From Cyanophora paradoxa CCMP329 (taxonomy: Eukaryota; Plantae; Glaucophyta): DNA of 64,000 nt. The position numbers and the translations under genes are program-made. The DNA is taken from assembly GCA_004431415.1 (NCBI GenBank), contig QPMI01000687.1, forward strand, positions 26,745 through 90,744, read 5' to 3'. Under the pieces are notes generated by a model, which saw only the letters and a list, made by a program, of their open reading frames with translations, ran no database searches and was not told the origin of the DNA. Positions 1,740-59,300 of this stretch are shown one piece after another; the first letter of the stretch is position 1; the number at the start of each line of letters is the position of its first letter.

Positions 1740-3464
1740 ATGTACGCGGCTTGCTCGGCCGCACAGCTCGACAAAGCATTTTTGTCTCGTGCAGGCCCGA
1801 GCACCGTGAGCTCGAGCTGCTCGACGGCGACTGCGGCTGCGCGTGTCCGATCGAGCCAACCGGCTCGGAGAGCAAGCGCCAGCTTCCTCAAGCGCCCAAC
1901 CATCGAGCTGGACACAGCCAGCCGCCGCTGGACAAACTCGAACTCTATCCACTTCCGTTCGATCGCTGCCAGGCAAGCCGGCAGCGCTTTTCGGCAGCGC
2001 TTTGAGCTCCCGAGAGGGATCTCTTTCTAATGCTTGCGATCTCCTCCGCAGGCGCAGCCCGCTTGCCCAGCTGCCGTTGAAGCCCGCCGTCCCCTGCAAC
2101 GCGCGCATCTCTCCGGCGGAACGGCCGTACACGGCCGTCATGATCGTGCCTACGGGCATTGGTGCCTCAATCGGCGGCTACGCAGGAGACGCCCTGCCCG
2201 CGGCGCGCGCGCTCGCAGAGGTGCGCGGCCTGAGGCACGTCGAAGCCGCATGGCGCGACCCTCGGGGCGCCTCTCGCAGGTCGTGGACTGCTTGATCACG
2301 CACCCGAACGTGCTCAACGGCGCTCAGCTATTCTGGCCGATGCGCAACACGCTGTACGTGGAGGGCTACGCGCTGGACAAGTTCGCCGCGGGCGAGTGGG
2401 GTGCGCGGCGTCCCGGGCCCCCGCGCCCCCCGCGGGGCGCCGCTGACCCTCGCCGCCGCGCAGGGCTGCGGCCGGTGCACTCGAACCGCGTGGGCCTGAT
2501 CCTGGACGCGGGGATCGAACCGGAGCTGCGGCTGCGGCACGTGCAGGCGGCAGACGCGTGCCGGGCGACGCTCGGCCTGCAGGTCAGTGAGTACGTCGTC
2601 ACTGACGAGCCGCTCGGCGTGGAGCTCTCCCGCTCCGCCTCGGGGGCCTCCTGGGGCACGCTGCGGAGCCCCGGGGCGCTGCTGCGGGCGGCGGAGGGCC
2701 TGCTGGCGCGGGGCCGGACGGACGCGGTGGCGGTGGTGGCGCGCTTCCCCGACGGCCTCGGGGACGAGGAGGCGCTGCAGGCCTACCGCGAGGGCCGCGG
2801 CGTCGACCCCCTCGCCGGCGCCGAGGCCGTCATCTCCCACCTCGTCGTCTCCCGCCTCCGCGTACCCTGCGCCCACGCCCCGGCCCTCGCCCCGCTCGCC
2901 CCGGACCCGGCCCTCGCCCCAAAGTCCGCTGCCGAGGAGATCGGGCACACCTTCCTCCCCTGCGTCCTCGCGGGGCTCGCGCGGGCGCCCCTGATCGTCC
3001 CCAGCCGGGCGGCCTCCGCGGCGGGGGACATCTGGCGCGAGGCGGTCGACGCCGTCGTCGCCCCGGACACCGCCTGCGGGGGGCCCGGCCTCCTCGCCCT
3101 CGCCGCCGGCACCCGCGCCCGCCTCGTCACCGTCCGCGAGAACGAGACCGCCATGCGGGCCGCCCCCGACGCCCTCGGCATCCCCGACGCCGCGCGCCTC
3201 CGGACCTACCTCGAGGCCGTCGGCTGGGTCGCCGCACACAAGGCCGGCGTCGACCCGGCATGCATCAGCCCGCGCGTGGAGCCCCTCCCGGAGGTCCCGC
3301 CCCTCCCCCGTCACGACTCCGTCGCCCAGTCCAACGGCGAGCTGACATTCCACTCCTTCTCGGCGACCGTACCCGGCGCCGGCCCCGTCCAAGGGACCGC
3401 ACCTCCCCCAGCGAGTGTGCCTCCGCACTCCCCCGCACCCGAGCGCTCCCCTGCCGTAGCTTGA
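1740..3464 (+). CDS. DUF3326 family protein (cyanobacterial/plastid type) with N-terminal transit-peptide-like extension
   Basis: Motifs MIVPTGIGASIGGYAGDALP, LITHPNVLNGAQLFW, GVDPLAGAEAVISH and AAEEIGHTFLPCVL. Ser/Ala/Arg-rich N-terminus. Introns at about 1972-2051 (GC donor), 2221-2279 and 2401-2463. Alternative ATG at 1707. Confidence 0.85.
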
Positions 3465-33513: not shown

Positions 33514-34445
33514 ATGCCGCCGATCAGCAATGGCGAGCGCGAGTACATTGTGCGCGGTGCGGAGATGAACCTGCGATCGGACGGGCGCGGCTGCCTCGAC
33601 TACCGATCTTTCTCGATCGAAACGGGCTTGTTAGCGCAAGCGAACGGCAGCGCGCGCGTGCGGCTCGCGCGGACGGACGTGCTGGTCGGCGTGAAGGCGG
33701 AGATAGCGAAGCCGGCGGAGGGGCGGCCCGACCGGGGCATGGTCGCGTGCGCCGTGGAGTGCTGCCCGACCGCCTCCGCCGAGTTCCAGGGGCGGCAGGC
33801 GGAGGAGATCAACGCGGAGCTGACGCGCGTGCTGGAGCAGCAGTTCGAGCACCCGAGCGCGCTGGACTACGCCTCGCTCTCCATCCAGCCGGGGAGGACG
33901 TGCTGGGTCCTCTTCATCGACGCCCTCGTGCTCGCCGCCGACGGGAACCTCGCCGACGCGATCTCGGTGGCGGCGCGCGCGGCGCTGAGCAACACGCGGG
34001 TGCCGAAGATCGAGCTGGTGCCGGGAGACCGCCCCGGGGAGATGGAGATCGAGGTCAGCGACGACCCGCACGAGGCGGCGCCGGTGGGCGTGGCGAGCGT
34101 GCCCCTCTGCGTCACCCTCCACCGCATCGGCTCCCGCTACGTCGCCGACGCCACGCGCGAGGAGGAAGCCTGCTCCACCGCCCGCGTCCGCCCCCGCCCC
34201 CGCCCCGCGCCACTCCGCCGCGCCGGGGCGAGCGGGGCCGGGGGCAGGTGACGGTGGGGGTGGACGGGGAGGGGCAGGTGTGCGCCATGCACAAGCTGGG
34301 GGCGGGGGCGCTGGACCCGGCGTCGCTGGAGGGGATGCTGCAGACGGCGCGCCGGCTCGGCGCGGCCCTCATCAAGGCCCTCGACGCCTGCCTCGCCGCC
34401 GAGCGCCGCCTCGCCGACGCCCCCAAGGTCGCCTTCCTCTCCTGA
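33514..34445 (+). CDS. EXOSC7: Exosome complex component RRP42 (RNase PH fold)
   Basis: ISNGEREYIVRG..NLRSDGRGCLDYR, QANGSARVRL..TDVLVGVKAEI, CWVLFIDALVL..DGNLADAIS.A..AAL.NTRVP. One intron at 34186-34247. Confidence 0.92.
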
Positions 34446-34674
34446 CACCGCCCCCGCTCCCCCGCCCCGTGCCCCGCCCCGTGCCCCCGGCCCCTCCCGT
34501 CCCCGCCTCCCCCCCCCCCCCCCCCCCTCTGCCCCCTCTCTGCGAATGCATGTCTCAGCATCCGCCCCGCCGCCGCGGGCCCCGCTGAGAGAAGAGGGTT
34601 TGGACTATGAATCTGCTACACAAACTAGCCCTGCCTAGAAAGTACACGAGGGGCGCGAGGGCGCGAGGGCCTGC

Positions 34675-35815
34675 TCACGCTCCCGCCGGTCGCCCGATGT
34701 TTATCCTCTCGAGGGCGCCCTCGAGCTGCCGGCGGGCGCTGGTCACGCGACAGCGCGCGAAGGAAAGCAAGGGAGCAGGGGGTGGGGCACCCGCTTGGTG
34801 TGGTCGCTGGTGAGGGCCGTGGAGGAGAGGAGCTCGGGGACGGCGGCGGCGGTGTTGGCGGGGGAGACGCGGGGCAGGGCGAAGGTGCCGACGGTGAGCT
34901 CCTTCATCTGCGCGGCGCGCTGGCTGATCATCTTCTCCCGCTCCCCCGTCTCCTTCCCCTCCGGCGCTTGCGTGATGTCGATCATGCTCCTGCGGGCCGC
35001 CTCGGGGGGGGCGCCGAGGGGCGCCGGCGGGGGCCGCGGAGGGGCGGGGGCGGGGGCGCGCGGCGCACGCGACGGCGCGGTCGGAGATCTCCTTCAGCAC
35101 GTCCTCCCGCGTCTTCTGCTTGGAGCCCTGCTGCTGCGCCTCCGCCCGCGAGCCCGCCGCCCCCCTTCCCTCCACGCCCCCGGCCCCCGACGGTCCTGGC
35201 CGGCCTCCGTCCACCATCGCCACGTCGGTCATGTTGAGCGGCTGCACCTGCGCGCGCCGGGCGCGGTGACGATGCGCGGGGTGGAAGCGGCGCCGCTCCG
35301 CGCACGTCTTTGTCCGATTCGAGGAACGCTCGGACAACAACGCTCGACGCGATTGCTTGCTGAATGAGCAACCCCTGCAAGTATGTATCCAGCTCGGCTG
35401 CGGCGCGCGGAGTGGGCGAGGTTCAATCTGAGGGCGCGCTAGCTAAACAGACGCACCGCGGCGCTTCTGCACGAATGATGCCTCCATGGAATCGCCAAAG
35501 AAGCGCTTTCCAGGAAACTTCGGGATTCGAGGGAAGCGCTCCTTGAGCTGGGCGCCAGGGGTCGCGTCGAGTGCCCCGCGAGAATGCGCGGGGCGCGGAC
35601 CTGGTCGTTGAACTCATCGAATTGACTGTATCGTTTGTACAGCCGCCAAGACGGCTCGGCGCCCTTCTTCACCTCCACGATGTACACCTTCGAAGTGCGC
35701 GTGGGCGGGCGCGCGGGCGGAAGGGTGCGGGAGGCCGCACTGTGTGTGCCTTCTTAGCATCGCGCACTGTCGCCGAGCCCACGATCTTCGCCGCGTACTC
35801 GACGTGCGCCGCCAT
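34675..35815 (-). CDS. PX-domain protein with a LAMTOR1/Ego1-like C-terminal region
   Basis: PX domain: HT|VYIVEV..WRLYKRYSQFDEFNDQ|LKERFPRIPKFPGKRFFG..FVQKRRA|ELDTYLQGLL....VVRAFLE. C-terminal half: REDVLKEISDRAVASMIDITQ...QRAAQMKEL...LPRVSP...PELLSSTALTSDHTKR|LEGALERINIG. Confidence 0.8.
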
Positions 35816-35945
35816 CGCCAGCTGTACCCCAACTGCCAACAAAGCCCACTGTACCCCCGCAACCTCCGAATTGTTGAAGTCGAAGTCGCATACGAATCCA
35901 CGTGCGATCACGATCGATTATTAGCAACAACCGCCCTCCCATGCC

Positions 35946-36543
35946 TAGGCCTGCGGCTTGCAGGCAAGCCCTTGAGCCAAGCCCTTGAGCCGGGCTGGGA
36001 GGTCAAGCCCTTGTCTGGCTTTTGGCCGGCTCAAGCCGGCTCAAGCCCTGAACGGGGAGGGGGGGGGAGGCGTCGGAGGGGGGTGCCGGACGCAGCTGGG
36101 CGCCTGCAGCGCATTTGAATCGGAGCTGATTATAAGCTTAAGATATAAGCCTGCGACGGCAACGTTAACTAACATAAGAATCAACGGCCTGCAACGGCAC
36201 GTACCCCCCGCGGCGCCGGCCAGCCACAGTGCGGCTGGCGCCTGCGTGCCACACGTGCATGCACGCGTTGGCGATTGCTATTATAATTTTATAAGAGTAT
36301 ATGTACATGTGTTTCTTCGTGAATTCGAAGCTTAAGCCAAATATAAGCATTGGGCTGCGGTGCGAAGGGCCTTCGGAACGGTACCCCCCCTTAGGCTTGC
36401 CGCAAGCCCGGCCAAGGGCTTGACCCGCTCGGGAGGCCAAGCCCTTGGGCCGGCCGGCCGGCCGGCTTGGCTTGGCTTGACCGCGAGGGCCCGGGGCTTG
36501 GCTTGGCTTAAGCCGACTTTTTGGCCGGCAAGCCGCACCCCTA
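35946..36543. mobile_element. Non-autonomous hAT-like DNA transposon (MITE), 598 bp
   Basis: 8-bp target-site duplication CCCATGCC at 35938-35945 and 36544-36551. Terminal inverted repeats TAGGCCTGCGGCTTGCAGGC and TAGGGGTGCGGCTTGCCGGC (17/20 identical). CAAGCC subterminal repeats on the left, GGCTTG on the right. Confidence 0.85.
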
Positions 36544-37226
36544 CCCATGCCTCCGCAGCCGCGTTTATCGATGATGATGGTTAGATTCCTGCAAAATTCC
36601 GAGCAGCGACCGGCGACGGTAGTAGCTAGCTATGGCCAAGCTCGCCGCAAAGTCACACCTTGGGCCCTTGACGTCGCCTTCAGCTTCCATTCCTCGGCCT
36701 TCGAATCTCGCCAAGGCTTTCGTCATCTGCATGCCATGATGCGTACGAAGCGCAAACCTTATGATCAACGTGCGCAACCCTAGGCCTAGGCCTCGGCGCG
36801 GCCAGCCGCGGGTTTCGACGCGACACGCTAGCTATAGCTTCCCTCAGCTGCAGAGTCCTTCACTCAACGGGGCGCGGCGCGAGCTCGCCTGCAGGTGCAG
36901 TCCTAAGTTGATGCGCATGCGCACGTTGTCTCGAAGACACGCGCTTCGCCACCGCAGCCGCGGCTCCGGCGGGGCCGGAGGTTAACGTTCGTGGCGTGCC
37001 ACGGTGTGCCCTTAAAGCTTCCGAGTGACACCAGTCCCGAATCCTTGGCTTATGAGACGTGCAGAAGGCTTGGAGAGCAACAGACGGGGCTAGGCTCCGG
37101 ATCCTATCGGAGCGTGCGCGTCGCTCATCTCGGACATCGATCACCGGACCACGCGCGCCGGGCGCCGATCCGCGAGCGTTTGGCGCGCCGTCGCCGAACC
37201 TGGGCCCAAACGTTGACGTTGACCGG

Positions 37227-56050: not shown

Positions 56051-56344
56051 GGTGGAGCGCGCGGGACGCGGGGCGCAGATGAATGCGCTACTCCTCACGT
56101 TGCGCGGGAGCTGCGCGTGGCTCTCTAGATCGCAGAGTTAGAGTTAACAAAAGTTCGTTTTGGGGGTACGCTGACGGAAGTGCGACTTCGGTTCCAGCAC
56201 GTTGCTCGCTGCGATCAGATTGTCACGAGGAAGCGCTAAGTTTCGCGTCGAGGTCCCGCTCCGGCGAGCGCCAGCGCGCCAGCAGCTCGCAGAGAGCAGC
56301 AGCCCCGACCGCGTCAGCGGCGCGGGACCCGTAATTCTAAAGCT

Positions 56345-59300
56345 ATGGTCAAGGCCTACCTAAGATATGTGCTCCATCAAACGTTCGGCGTTGTCGTCAG
56401 CCACAACTCGAACATCGCTCTCGATGGCACGGGCAAGATCGCGTACTGCCCGGCGCTGGAGAACGTGGCAATATGGAACATCAAGACCGGCACGCTGGTG
56501 AGATGCAGCCCGCGCAGCCTGCAGCGCCCGCCGGGGCGAGATCGGCCCGTCTGCGCTTGCGCCCCAATCCACGTACGCGATCCTCACGTACACGTGCGTC
56601 GCCGATCGCAGGTGAGGCAGCTAACGGGGGAGGGCAAGGGAGAAGTCACGTGCCTCGCGCTCAGCCCGGATGAGAAGACCCTCGCCGTCGGGTGCGCCGG
56701 CCCCGCCGTGGCTGCGCGCCGGCGAGGGCGAGCGAGGGCCGGCAGGCACGCGACGGGGGCGATTCGGCTGTGGAACATCGCGCAGGGGACGAGCACGGTG
56801 TCGTTCGCGGGGCACAAGTCGGCGATCTCGGCGCTGCGCTTCAACGGGGACGGCTCGCTGCTCGCCTCGGGCGCCCGCGACACGGACCTCGTCCTCTGGG
56901 ACGTCATCGCCGAGAGCGGCCTCTACAGGTGCGCGGGGCCGGCGGGGCGGGGCGGGCGGGGCGGGGCGGGGCCTGAGGGGCGGGCAGGCTGCGGGGCCAC
57001 AAGGACGCGATCACGGACGTGGCGTTCCTCGAGGCCCGCCGCCAGCTCGTCTCCTCCTCCAAGGACACCCTCCTCAAGGCCCGCCCCCCCCCCCACCTCC
57101 GCCCCCCGCCCGAAAGCGAGGCGGGGCGGGGCGGGGCGGCGCCAGGTGTGGGACCTGGAGACGCAGCACTGCGTGCAGACGATCGTGGGGCACCGGGGGG
57201 AGGTGACGGCGATGGCGGTGGACCCCGCGCAGGCGCGCCTCGTCACCGCCTCCTCCGCCGACGACGAGCTCCGCTTCTTCGCCCTCCCCGCCCCCGCCGC
57301 CCCCGCCGCCCCCGACCCCGACCCCGAGGGCGCCCCCGAGGCGGCCTCGGGCCCGGCGGAGCTCGCGCTGCTGGGCTCGCTGCGGCGCGAGAGCAAGGAG
57401 CGGGTCGTCACCCTCCGCTACCACCCCTCCGGCTCCATCCTCGGCTGCCAGACCGCCGACAAGATCGTCCAGGCCCGCCCCGCCCCGCCCCGCCCCGCCC
57501 CGCTCCTGCGCCGCCGACGGGGCGCAGCTCTTCCGAGTGCACTCGGCGGAGGAGGCGCAGCGGCGGGCCAAGCGCCGCCGCAAGCGCCTCCGCGAGAAGC
57601 AGCGCGCCAAGGGCGAGGGGGAGGCGGGGGCGGGGGAGGGGGAGGGGGCCGGGGAGGGGGAGGAGGGTGTGGCCCTGCGGGACGAGGTGGCGGGGCTGGC
57701 GATGGTGCGCGCCTCGCACAAGCTCCGCTCCTTCGCCTTCGGGCCCCTCGCCCCCGCCAAGGCCGGCGCCAAGGAGGCGGCGCCCCGCGTCACCCTCCTC
57801 GCCGCCCTCACCAACAACGCCCTCGAGCTCTACGCGGTGGGGGCCCCCGGCGAGGGCGCCTCCAAGGCCTCCGAGGGGGCGACGGGCGTGGGCGAGCGCG
57901 TGGGGGCCCTGGAGGGGGCCGGCCACCGCTCCGACGTCCGCGCCCTCGCCCTCTCCGCCGACGACGCCCTCCTCGCCTCCACCTCCAGCGGCCCGCCCCG
58001 CCCGCCCTGCCCCGCCCCGCCCCGCCGCCTCACGTGCCCGCAGGCTCGCTGAAGGTGTGGAACGCGCGGACGCGGCAGTGCGTGCGGACGGTGGCCTCGG
58101 GCTACGGCACGTGCGTGCTCTTCGTACCGGGGGCGAAGCAGGTGCTGGTGGGGACCAAGTCGGGCGCCTTGGAGCTCTACGAGGTGGCCTCGGGGGCGCT
58201 CCTGGAGGCCGTGCGGGCGCACGAGGGCACCGTCTGGTCCCTCGCCCTCCGCCCCGACCGCTGCGGCATCGCCTCCGCCGGCGCCGACAAGACGGCCCGC
58301 CCCGCCCCGCACCCGCCCCGCACCCCCGCCCCCCGCTGAGCGCCCCGCAGGTCAAGTTCTGGGACTTCGAGCTCGTCAGCGACCCCGAGTACTCCGCCGT
58401 GCGCCCCCCGCCGCCCCCGCCGCCCCGCCGCCCGGCGCGAGGGCGCTGCAGACGGCGAAGCGGGTGTCGCTGGGGCACGCGCGGACGCTGCAGCTGGAGG
58501 AGGACGTGCTGGGCGTGCGCTACAGCCCCGACGGGCGCTACCTCGCCGTCGCCCTCCTCGACTCCACCGTCAAGGCGCGCGGCGCGGGGCGGGGCCGCGG
58601 GGCGGGGCGCGGGGCGAGCGGGGCGGGGGCAGGTCTTCTTCGAGGACTCGCTCAAGTTCTACCTGGCGCTCTACGGGCACAAGCTCCCCGTGCTGGCCCT
58701 CGACGTCTCCTCCGACAGCACCCTCGTGGCCACCGCCTCCGCCGACAAGACCCTCAAGGTCTGGGGCCTCGACTTCGGCGACTGCCACCGCTCCCTCCGC
58801 GCCCACGCCGACAGGCCCGCCCCCGCCCCGCCCCGCCGCCCCCGGGGCCCCGCTGACGGGGCGGGGCCGGCAGCGTGACGGCGGTGCAGTTCGTGCCGCG
58901 GACGCACTACGCGTTCACGGCGGGGAAGGACGGGAAGGTGAAGTACTGGGACCTGGACAAGTTCGAGTGCGTGCTGACGCTGGACGGGCACCTGGCGGAG
59001 GCGTGGTGCCTCGCCGTCGCCTCGGACGGGTCGTTCGTGGTCTCGGGCTCGCACGACCGCTCGCTGCGGGTCTGGGAGCGCACCGAGGAGCAGGTCTTCC
59101 TCGAGGAGGAGCGCGAGCGCGCCCTCGAGGCCCTCTTCGACGCCGACGACGCCCCCGCCGGCCTCCCCGGCGAGGCCCGCCCCCGGCCCCGGCCCCGCGC
59201 TCGCGCCCCCGCCCCACGCCTCACGCCGCCGGGCGCAGGCCGGCGTGGCGATCCGGCCGATGGGCCCCGACGGGGAGCCGGTGGCGGGGGAGGAAGGGGA

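What the first reader, a model, noticed from the sequence alone, without database searches (positions are those of the whole stretch)
34675..35815. PX domain fused to a LAMTOR1/Ego1-like region: possible PI3P-anchored Ragulator scaffold
Seen: after splicing, a complete PX domain with the usual PI3P-binding residues (KRYSQF, IPKFPGK, QKRR) is followed by REDVLKEISDRAVASMIDITQAPEG...ISQRAAQMKEL...ALPRVSP...VPELLSSTAL...KRLEGALERINIG. Known: LAMTOR1/p18, recalled from memory, has the same ordered motifs ([51 protein letters not shown]) and is anchored to the lysosome/vacuole by N-terminal myristoylation and palmitoylation. This protein starts MAAHVEY, with no Gly2 or nearby Cys. Inference: a PX domain may replace lipidation to tether a Rag/TORC1 scaffold to PI3P membranes. 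Land plants are generally considered to lack Ragulator, so this would be notable in an alga.
Basis: partly seen in the sequence, partly recalled or inferred. Interest (0 to 1): 0.85.

Follow-up and report, generated by a model that had tools for sequence, protein, structure and literature searches.

The report
PX-anchored candidate Ragulator scaffold in Cyanophora
The alga Cyanophora paradoxa makes a real, spliced protein in which a lipid-gripping PX domain sits where the nutrient-sensing scaffold LAMTOR1 normally carries fatty-acid anchors, which would be a new way to pin growth-control GTPases to membranes, but the LAMTOR1 resemblance is weak and unproven.

Summary
The gene is real: seven exons on the minus strand, all six introns seen in RNA contigs (five in three studies, one in two), one contig spanning both halves; the 257-aa product equals Cyanophora paradoxa g23221 in EukProt. 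Residues 11-114 are a PX domain (Pfam E 3e-18; nearest structures SGK3, SNX16) with all four PI3P ligands. There is no Gly2, no Cys anywhere and no acidic dileucine. The only Pfam family hit by the tail is LAMTOR (PF15454), at E 0.04-0.14, 13-15 bits against a cut-off of 25. The hit covers the Rag-binding helix and the following I-D-hydrophobic motif, and lacks the model's first 23 positions. Rag GTPases are already reported for glaucophytes, so the novelty would be the anchor swap, not Ragulator in an alga. Odds: about 0.7 for LAMTOR1 descent, 0.55 that it is the PI3P-tethered anchor. LAMTOR1-like, not filed as a member. The scan noted it only on this same DNA.

The parts
35741..35815 (-). 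Exon 1, residues 1-25; starts Met-Ala, no Gly2, no Cys; first strand of PX
   Evidence: RNA contigs begin at 35818-35831, no RNA depth upstream of 35838
35601..35687 (-). Exon 2, residues 26-54; PX, with R44-Y45
   Evidence: (PX E 0.05 alone)
35457..35547 (-). Exon 3, residues 55-84; PX PPK loop (I62-P63-x-x-P66-x-K68) and R83/R84
   Evidence: (PX E 0.005 alone)
35306..35397 (-). Exon 4, residues 85-115; end of PX; a phase-0 intron follows right at the domain boundary
35069..35247 (-). Exon 5, residues 116-175; Gly/Ala/Gln-rich linker (about 45 aa), then the LAMTOR1 alpha1-like helix (V165, L166, I169)
34962..35154 (-). Stretch matched by Pfam LAMTOR (residues 147-184, profile 24-61 of 75); spans intron 5 (35068-34990)
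   Evidence: E 0.043-0.14, 13-15 bits, cut-off 25
34791..34989 (-). Exon 6, residues 175-241; M177-I178-D179-I180 motif, predicted helices 189-211 and 218-229, L213-P214-x-V216
34675..34725 (-). Exon 7, residues 242-257 and stop; last predicted helix (236-249) and a 6-residue tail after I251
34586..34674 (-). 3' UTR as covered by RNA contigs (unbroken, no seventh intron)
   Evidence: table 8

Best explanation
The protein is the Cyanophora counterpart of LAMTOR1/Ego1/Lam1 with a different membrane anchor. The N-terminal PX domain binds PI3P on endosome or vacuole membranes (inferred from four conserved ligands; not assayed). After a flexible linker of about 45 residues, helix 162-176 and the M-I-D-I motif grip the roadblock domain of RagC (inferred from the profile match and residue register). 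The three later helices wrap small roadblock subunits of the LAMTOR2-5 or Ego2/3 type (inferred by analogy only). The result is a Rag heterodimer held on PI3P membranes for TORC1 control, with an attachment that is reversible and depends on Vps34 activity instead of permanent acylation. Shown: gene structure, single transcript, PX identity, absence of lipidation sites. Weakly supported: LAMTOR1 descent (about 0.7). Inferred: everything about binding and localisation.
For: Single spliced transcript. PX E 2.7e-18; R44, Y45, K68 and R83/R84 match the four ligands required for PI3P. LAMTOR is the only one of 24,736 Pfam families hit by the tail, in 7 overlapping cuts; the hit vanishes without the exon 5-6 splice, and LAMTOR did not appear in about 4,450 control residues from the window. 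The matched part is profile 24-61, i.e. without the N-terminal part where the lipidation motif lies. Gap-free register: I169, I178, I180 equal human I57, I66, V68 and yeast I63, I72, I74, residues needed for Rag binding (PMC5680233, PMC5696360, PMC6760929). Four predicted helices in a region of LAMTOR1-like length ending at the C-terminus. Rags and Rheb reported in glaucophytes (PMC9664231). A lipid-less p18 with a mitochondrial anchor, and an NLS-tagged Lam1, still carry the complex to the new site. True orthologues diverge fast: S. pombe Lam1 was described as having no apparent homology; the Ego1 tail is short and its Gtr1 contact dispensable.
Against: Pfam score 13-15 bits is under the 25-bit cut-off, and E 0.04-0.14 is within chance range. 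No LAMTOR1/Ego1 chain found by phmmer of PDB, of 1.84 billion representatives, word search or Atlas. Contact-residue test p 0.06-0.10 overall, 0.25-0.45 for blocks after alpha1, with two competing registers. Human L58 / yeast V64 aligns to S170. The tail that anchors RagA in human p18 (E152-P161) has no counterpart. Fold searches on low-confidence models show no Ragulator chain (uninformative). No orthologue in any other species, so no conservation test.
Confidence: 0.55

Rival explanations
1. An ordinary SNX16/SGK3-type PX protein whose helical tail is lineage-specific (for example an oligomerisation or cargo-binding region); the LAMTOR1 likeness is chance.
For: Nearest solved structures are SGK3-PX and SNX16 PX-coiled coil. 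Atlas neighbours are PX-only clusters of 247-248 aa. Pfam LAMTOR score sub-threshold; motif test not significant; no homologues of the tail.
Against: The single family hit is an endolysosomal membrane scaffold, the match stops where the lipid anchor would start and falls on the Rag-binding helix in gap-free register; a random family at this E-value would rarely fit a PX partner that well (inference). The predicted tail is four short helices, not one long coiled coil.
Confidence: 0.29
2. A LAMTOR1-derived but secondary protein: a duplicate that kept mainly the Rag-binding helix and acts as an endosome-specific adaptor or decoy, while a normal acylated LAMTOR1 exists elsewhere in the genome.
For: Only the alpha1 region has profile support; later blocks and the tail do not. 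L58 is changed and the RagA-binding tail is absent. A phase-0 intron sits at the PX boundary, compatible with exon shuffling. The rest of the genome could not be searched.
Against: The tail has the full length and four-helix outline of the scaffold part; in human p18, residues 76-145 suffice for the pentamer and the p14-binding tail is not needed for it (PMC5680233).
Confidence: 0.15
3. Gene-model artefact: two separate genes or a mis-assembly fused in annotation.
For: None found.
Against: One 879-nt spliced contig spans all exons without mismatches; the PX-to-linker joint is seen in three studies and the exon 5-6 joint in two; an unspliced run covers 35172-35974 and 34519-35032.
Confidence: 0.01

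Closest known systems
LAMTOR1/p18 (human), Ego1/Meh1 (S. cerevisiae), Lam1 (S. pombe); Pfam PF15454
   Same: Weak profile match over the alpha1 helix and the following hydrophobic-I-D-hydrophobic motif in exact register; four predicted helices; region of similar length at the C-terminus, after a low-complexity linker.
   Different: No Gly2, no Cys, no acidic dileucine; PX domain instead; L58/V64 position is Ser; last helix about 14 residues against 18; only 6 residues after the final I-x-I; score below family cut-off.
SGK3/CISK and SNX16 PX domains
   Same: About 36% identity over the PX; four PI3P ligands kept; like SNX16 it has Asn at the column where SGK3 has Tyr, which I take to be the second lipid site, so PI3P-only binding is predicted.
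   Different: No kinase (SGK3) and no long coiled coil (SNX16); tail unrelated to either by any search.
Vam7 (yeast soluble vacuolar SNARE)
   Same: Same design: a soluble protein whose PX domain binds PI3P and so supplies the membrane attachment (PMC3843000).
   Different: Cargo domain is a SNARE motif; no sequence relation in the tail.
PLD1 and Vps501 (PX proteins upstream of TORC1); Pib2 (FYVE, from my own knowledge)
   Same: PI3P readers that feed into TORC1 at the lysosome or vacuole (PMC3206351, PMC9305297; titles and abstracts only).
   Different: They act beside the Rag scaffold; none is fused to LAMTOR1.

Membership tests
PX domain (PF00787) | Profile match above gathering score | tested here: met
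   66.7 bits against 21.6, E 2.7e-18; exons 2-4 each hit consecutive parts of the model
PX domain, PI3P-binding groups II/IV | Arg-Tyr pair, Lys of the PPK motif, Arg in helix 2 | tested here: met
   R44, Y45, K68, R83/R84 aligned with SGK3; rule from PMC6449406
PX domain, PI3P-binding groups II/IV | Measured PI3P binding | not testable with these tools
   needs liposome or ITC assay
LAMTOR1/Ego1 (PF15454) | Profile match above gathering score (25 bits) | tested here: not met
   13.3-14.9 bits, E 0.043-0.14, profile 24-61 of 75; sole family hit
LAMTOR1/Ego1 (PF15454) | N-terminal myristoylation Gly and palmitoylation Cys | tested here: not met
   starts Met-Ala; zero Cys in 257 aa; RNA shows no upstream exon
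LAMTOR1/Ego1 (PF15454) | Acidic dileucine sorting signal | tested here: not met
   no [DE]xxxL[LI] match in the protein; feature from PMC5752196
LAMTOR1/Ego1 (PF15454) | Rag-binding helix alpha1 with I57/L58 and I65-I66-x-V68 | tested here: inconclusive
   I169, M177, I178, I180 in exact register, S170 for L58; block alone p about 0.10 against shuffles
LAMTOR1/Ego1 (PF15454) | M-loop, alpha3 and alpha4 contacts for LAMTOR4/5 | tested here: inconclusive
   L213-P214-x-V216, L228-L229-x-S231 and D237 can be aligned, but p 0.25-0.45 and a second register scores as well
LAMTOR1/Ego1 (PF15454) | Four helices forming a belt around roadblock domains | tested here: inconclusive
   four helices predicted at pLDDT 40-49 from a single sequence; fold searches uninformative
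LAMTOR1/Ego1 (PF15454) | C-terminal tail that binds RagA (human 152-161; minor in Ego1) | tested here: not met
   protein ends 6 residues after I251; stop confirmed by unbroken RNA contigs
Ragulator/EGO complex | Rag heterodimer encoded in the genome | not testable with these tools
   no genome-wide search available; PMC9664231 reports Rags and Rheb in glaucophytes, with C. paradoxa as the glaucophyte named (figure not held)
Ragulator/EGO complex | LAMTOR2-5 or Ego2/3 roadblock partners and physical assembly | not testable with these tools
   no seed sequences by reference and no multimer prediction; scan notes hold no such gene, which shows nothing

The most novel reading that the evidence does not exclude
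Cyanophora has replaced the acylated, dileucine-sorted N-terminus of its only LAMTOR1 with a PI3P-specific PX domain, so the Ragulator-Rag platform is tethered reversibly through Vps34-made lipid. It would be the first natural non-acylated Ragulator anchor I could find described, and a derived state in the archaeplastid line whose green relatives lost Rags altogether.
Probability: 0.5. Interest if true: 0.75.

Novelty: new variant of a known kind. Interest (0 to 1): 0.57.

Why it matters
In animals, budding yeast and fission yeast the Rag scaffold is fixed to the lysosome or vacuole by N-terminal acylation plus a dileucine signal. A natural PX-anchored version would merge what are treated as two parallel amino-acid inputs to TORC1 (Rag-Ragulator and Vps34-PI3P) in one protein, and make scaffold localisation itself a regulated step. 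It would also name a LAMTOR1 in a glaucophyte, where Rags are reported but the anchor is not, and suggest that LAMTOR1 'absences' in protists may hide behind fusions and swapped anchors. It is directly testable: express it in ego1- or lam1-deficient yeast, or fuse its PX to anchor-less Ego1/p18.

Tried and rejected
Exon-by-exon Pfam and PDB searches: PX only; exons 5 and 6 alone hit nothing. Word searches with an exon-5 region, the whole protein and the tail found only the protein itself. phmmer of residues 140-257 against 1.84 billion representatives: itself plus one 856-aa ENA protein (P0002, E 4e-6, five stretches), which I read as a compositional match and did not pursue. ESM Atlas: no usable hit for the tail, PX clusters for the whole. 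Two metagenome scans: nothing. No contig record for the protein. AlphaFold2 without alignment: pLDDT 40 and 49; Foldseek, VIA-align and Atlas shape searches gave PX chains or generic helices. An ordered-motif shuffle gave 0 of 300,000; I reject it because the pattern was tailored after seeing the sequence, and rely on the fairer test. A possible seventh intron (donor at 34678) is not used in any RNA contig. An upstream exon giving Met-Gly-Cys: no RNA upstream of 35838. No paper links PX, LAMTOR1 and glaucophytes. I did not type any LAMTOR1 sequence from memory, so no direct pairwise or profile-profile comparison with LAMTOR1 was run.

Full report
Gene structure. The six-frame translation and splice sites give seven minus-strand exons: 35815-35741, 35687-35601, 35547-35457, 35397-35306, 35247-35069, 34989-34791 and 34725-34675, with GT-AG introns of 53-79 nt. 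Contigs of public runs confirm them. Runs X1 and X5 show all six joints and X8 shows five; X1 record 2 (879 nt, 34586-35831, no mismatches) holds the PX exons and the tail in one piece, while X18 reads through the introns. The runs are only guessed to be RNA, but spliced contigs show that they are. The stop at 34677-34675 is covered by unbroken contigs in three studies, and no RNA depth lies upstream of 35838. So the two halves are one gene.

Source. A search with the exon-5 region returned one protein, P0001, 257 aa, EukProt EP00741 Cyanophora paradoxa P024046 (tig00021721_g23221.t1), whose sequence equals the exon translations. The organism is thus a glaucophyte. Later full-length and part searches used the database's record P0001 by its id.

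PX domain. Pfam PX scores 66.7 bits, E 2.7e-18, and exons 2-4 match consecutive parts of the model. Nearest solved structures are SGK3 (E 2e-17) and SNX16 (E 5e-17). The four side chains required for PI3P binding (PMC6449406) are present: R44, Y45, K68 in a perfect PPK motif, and R83/R84. The column where SGK3 has Tyr holds N52, as in SNX16; taking that column as the second lipid site (my inference), PI3P-only binding is predicted. The protein has no Gly2, no cysteine at all and no acidic dileucine, the three signals that target LAMTOR1, Ego1 and Lam1 (PMC5752196).

The tail, evidence for LAMTOR1. Of 24,736 Pfam families only LAMTOR (PF15454) hits it: E 0.043-0.14, 13-15 bits, residues 147-184 on profile positions 24-61 of 75. 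The first 23 profile positions, where the lipidated N-terminus lies (my knowledge of the family), are unmatched. The hit needs the exon 5-6 splice: exon 5 alone, residues 116-175 and the unspliced reading frame give nothing. Ten long control frames from the window, about 4,450 residues, gave no LAMTOR hit (a rough control). Residues needed for Rag binding are I57/L58 and I65, I66, V68 in human p18 (PMC5680233, PMC5696360) and I63/V64, I72/I74 in Ego1 (PMC6760929). Here I169, M177, I178 and I180 fall in the same gap-free register; S170 stands for L58. Single-sequence AlphaFold2 predicts four helices, 162-181, 189-211, 218-229 and 236-249, at low confidence; p18 and Ego1 have four.

The tail, evidence against. 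The score is below the 25-bit cut-off and the E-value is in the range of chance. I scored all contact residues named in the two human structure papers as ordered blocks: p 0.06-0.10 for all blocks, 0.10 for the first alone, 0.25-0.45 for those after it, with two competing registers. The protein ends six residues after I251, without the RagA-binding tail that human p18 needs, although the Ego1 tail is short and its Gtr1 contact dispensable and p18 76-145 suffices for the pentamer. No relative of the tail was found in 1.84 billion representatives, the word index, PDB sequences, the Atlas or metagenomes. Fold searches on the poor models are uninformative. Fast divergence is typical of the family: S. 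pombe Lam1 was first described as without apparent homology, so these blanks weigh little either way.

Context. Rags and Rheb are reported in glaucophytes and red algae and lost only in green algae and land plants; Ragulator subunits are said to occur irregularly in microalgae (PMC9664231; PMC5745459). I could not search this genome for Rags, LAMTOR2-5 or a second LAMTOR1. The anchor of this scaffold is modular by experiment: p18 without its lipid site but with a mitochondrial anchor recruits the other subunits and Rags, and NLS-tagged Lam1 takes Gtr1-Gtr2 into the nucleus. Yeast Vam7 is the precedent for a PX domain as membrane attachment of a soluble vacuolar protein. I found no paper on a PX-LAMTOR1 fusion; the library is incomplete.

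Mechanism and odds. Most likely (0.55): PX binds PI3P on endosome or vacuole, the linker spaces the scaffold from the membrane, helix 162-180 binds RagC and the later helices wrap roadblock subunits, so that the Rag platform is attached reversibly and under Vps34 control. Shown: gene, transcript, PX, missing lipidation sites. Weakly supported: LAMTOR1 descent (about 0.7, my estimate, resting on the fit between the sole profile hit and the PX context). Inferred: all binding steps. Rivals: an ordinary PX protein with an unrelated tail (0.29), a secondary LAMTOR1-derived adaptor beside a normal copy (0.15), a model artefact (0.01). Because lipidation, the dileucine signal, the tail and the profile cut-off were tested and not met, I do not file it as a LAMTOR1 family member; I call it LAMTOR1-like.

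Verdict. Observation confirmed, interpretation partly supported. A new variant of a known kind if the homology holds; interest 0.57, 0.75 if proven. The other scan note on this stretch (s1-511275) is the same DNA read again and is no independent support.

Noticed in passing
window 33514-34445 (+): Convergent neighbour: RNase PH exosome subunit (Pfam RNase_PH E 7e-25; RRP42-like by my reading), one 62-nt GT-AG intron 34186-34247 confirmed by RNA; its 3' end lies about 230 nt from the PX gene's stop.
   Followed up: partly
window 34678-34613 (-): The stop codon overlaps a strong donor-like site (GTGAG at 34678); splicing to an AG at 34613 would remove the stop and add a short hydrophobic tail beginning F-I-V-Q, at about the spacing of the LAMTOR1 C-terminal tail as I recall it. 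No RNA contig shows this splice; contigs drop rare forms.
   Followed up: partly
window 35305-35248 (-): Intron 4 is phase 0 and sits at the end of the PX domain (codon 115/116), compatible with exon shuffling; weak, since introns occur about every 100 nt.
   Followed up: no
window 35940-36545: Upstream intergenic stretch with high depth and several variants in the unspliced run X18 and short repeated motifs on both sides (35940-36050 and 36390-36545), suggesting a small dispersed repeat with inverted ends.
   Followed up: no
window 2031-3461 (+): Long frame with a strong DUF3326 match (E 8e-131).
   Followed up: no
window 56240-58336 (+): WDR3/Utp12-type beta-propeller gene.
   Followed up: no
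another piece of this genome, scan note s1-511287: An unchecked note of a PX-PX fusion to a Byr4/Bfa1-like GAP scaffold; if real, PX fusion to GTPase-regulator scaffolds may recur in this alga.
   Followed up: no
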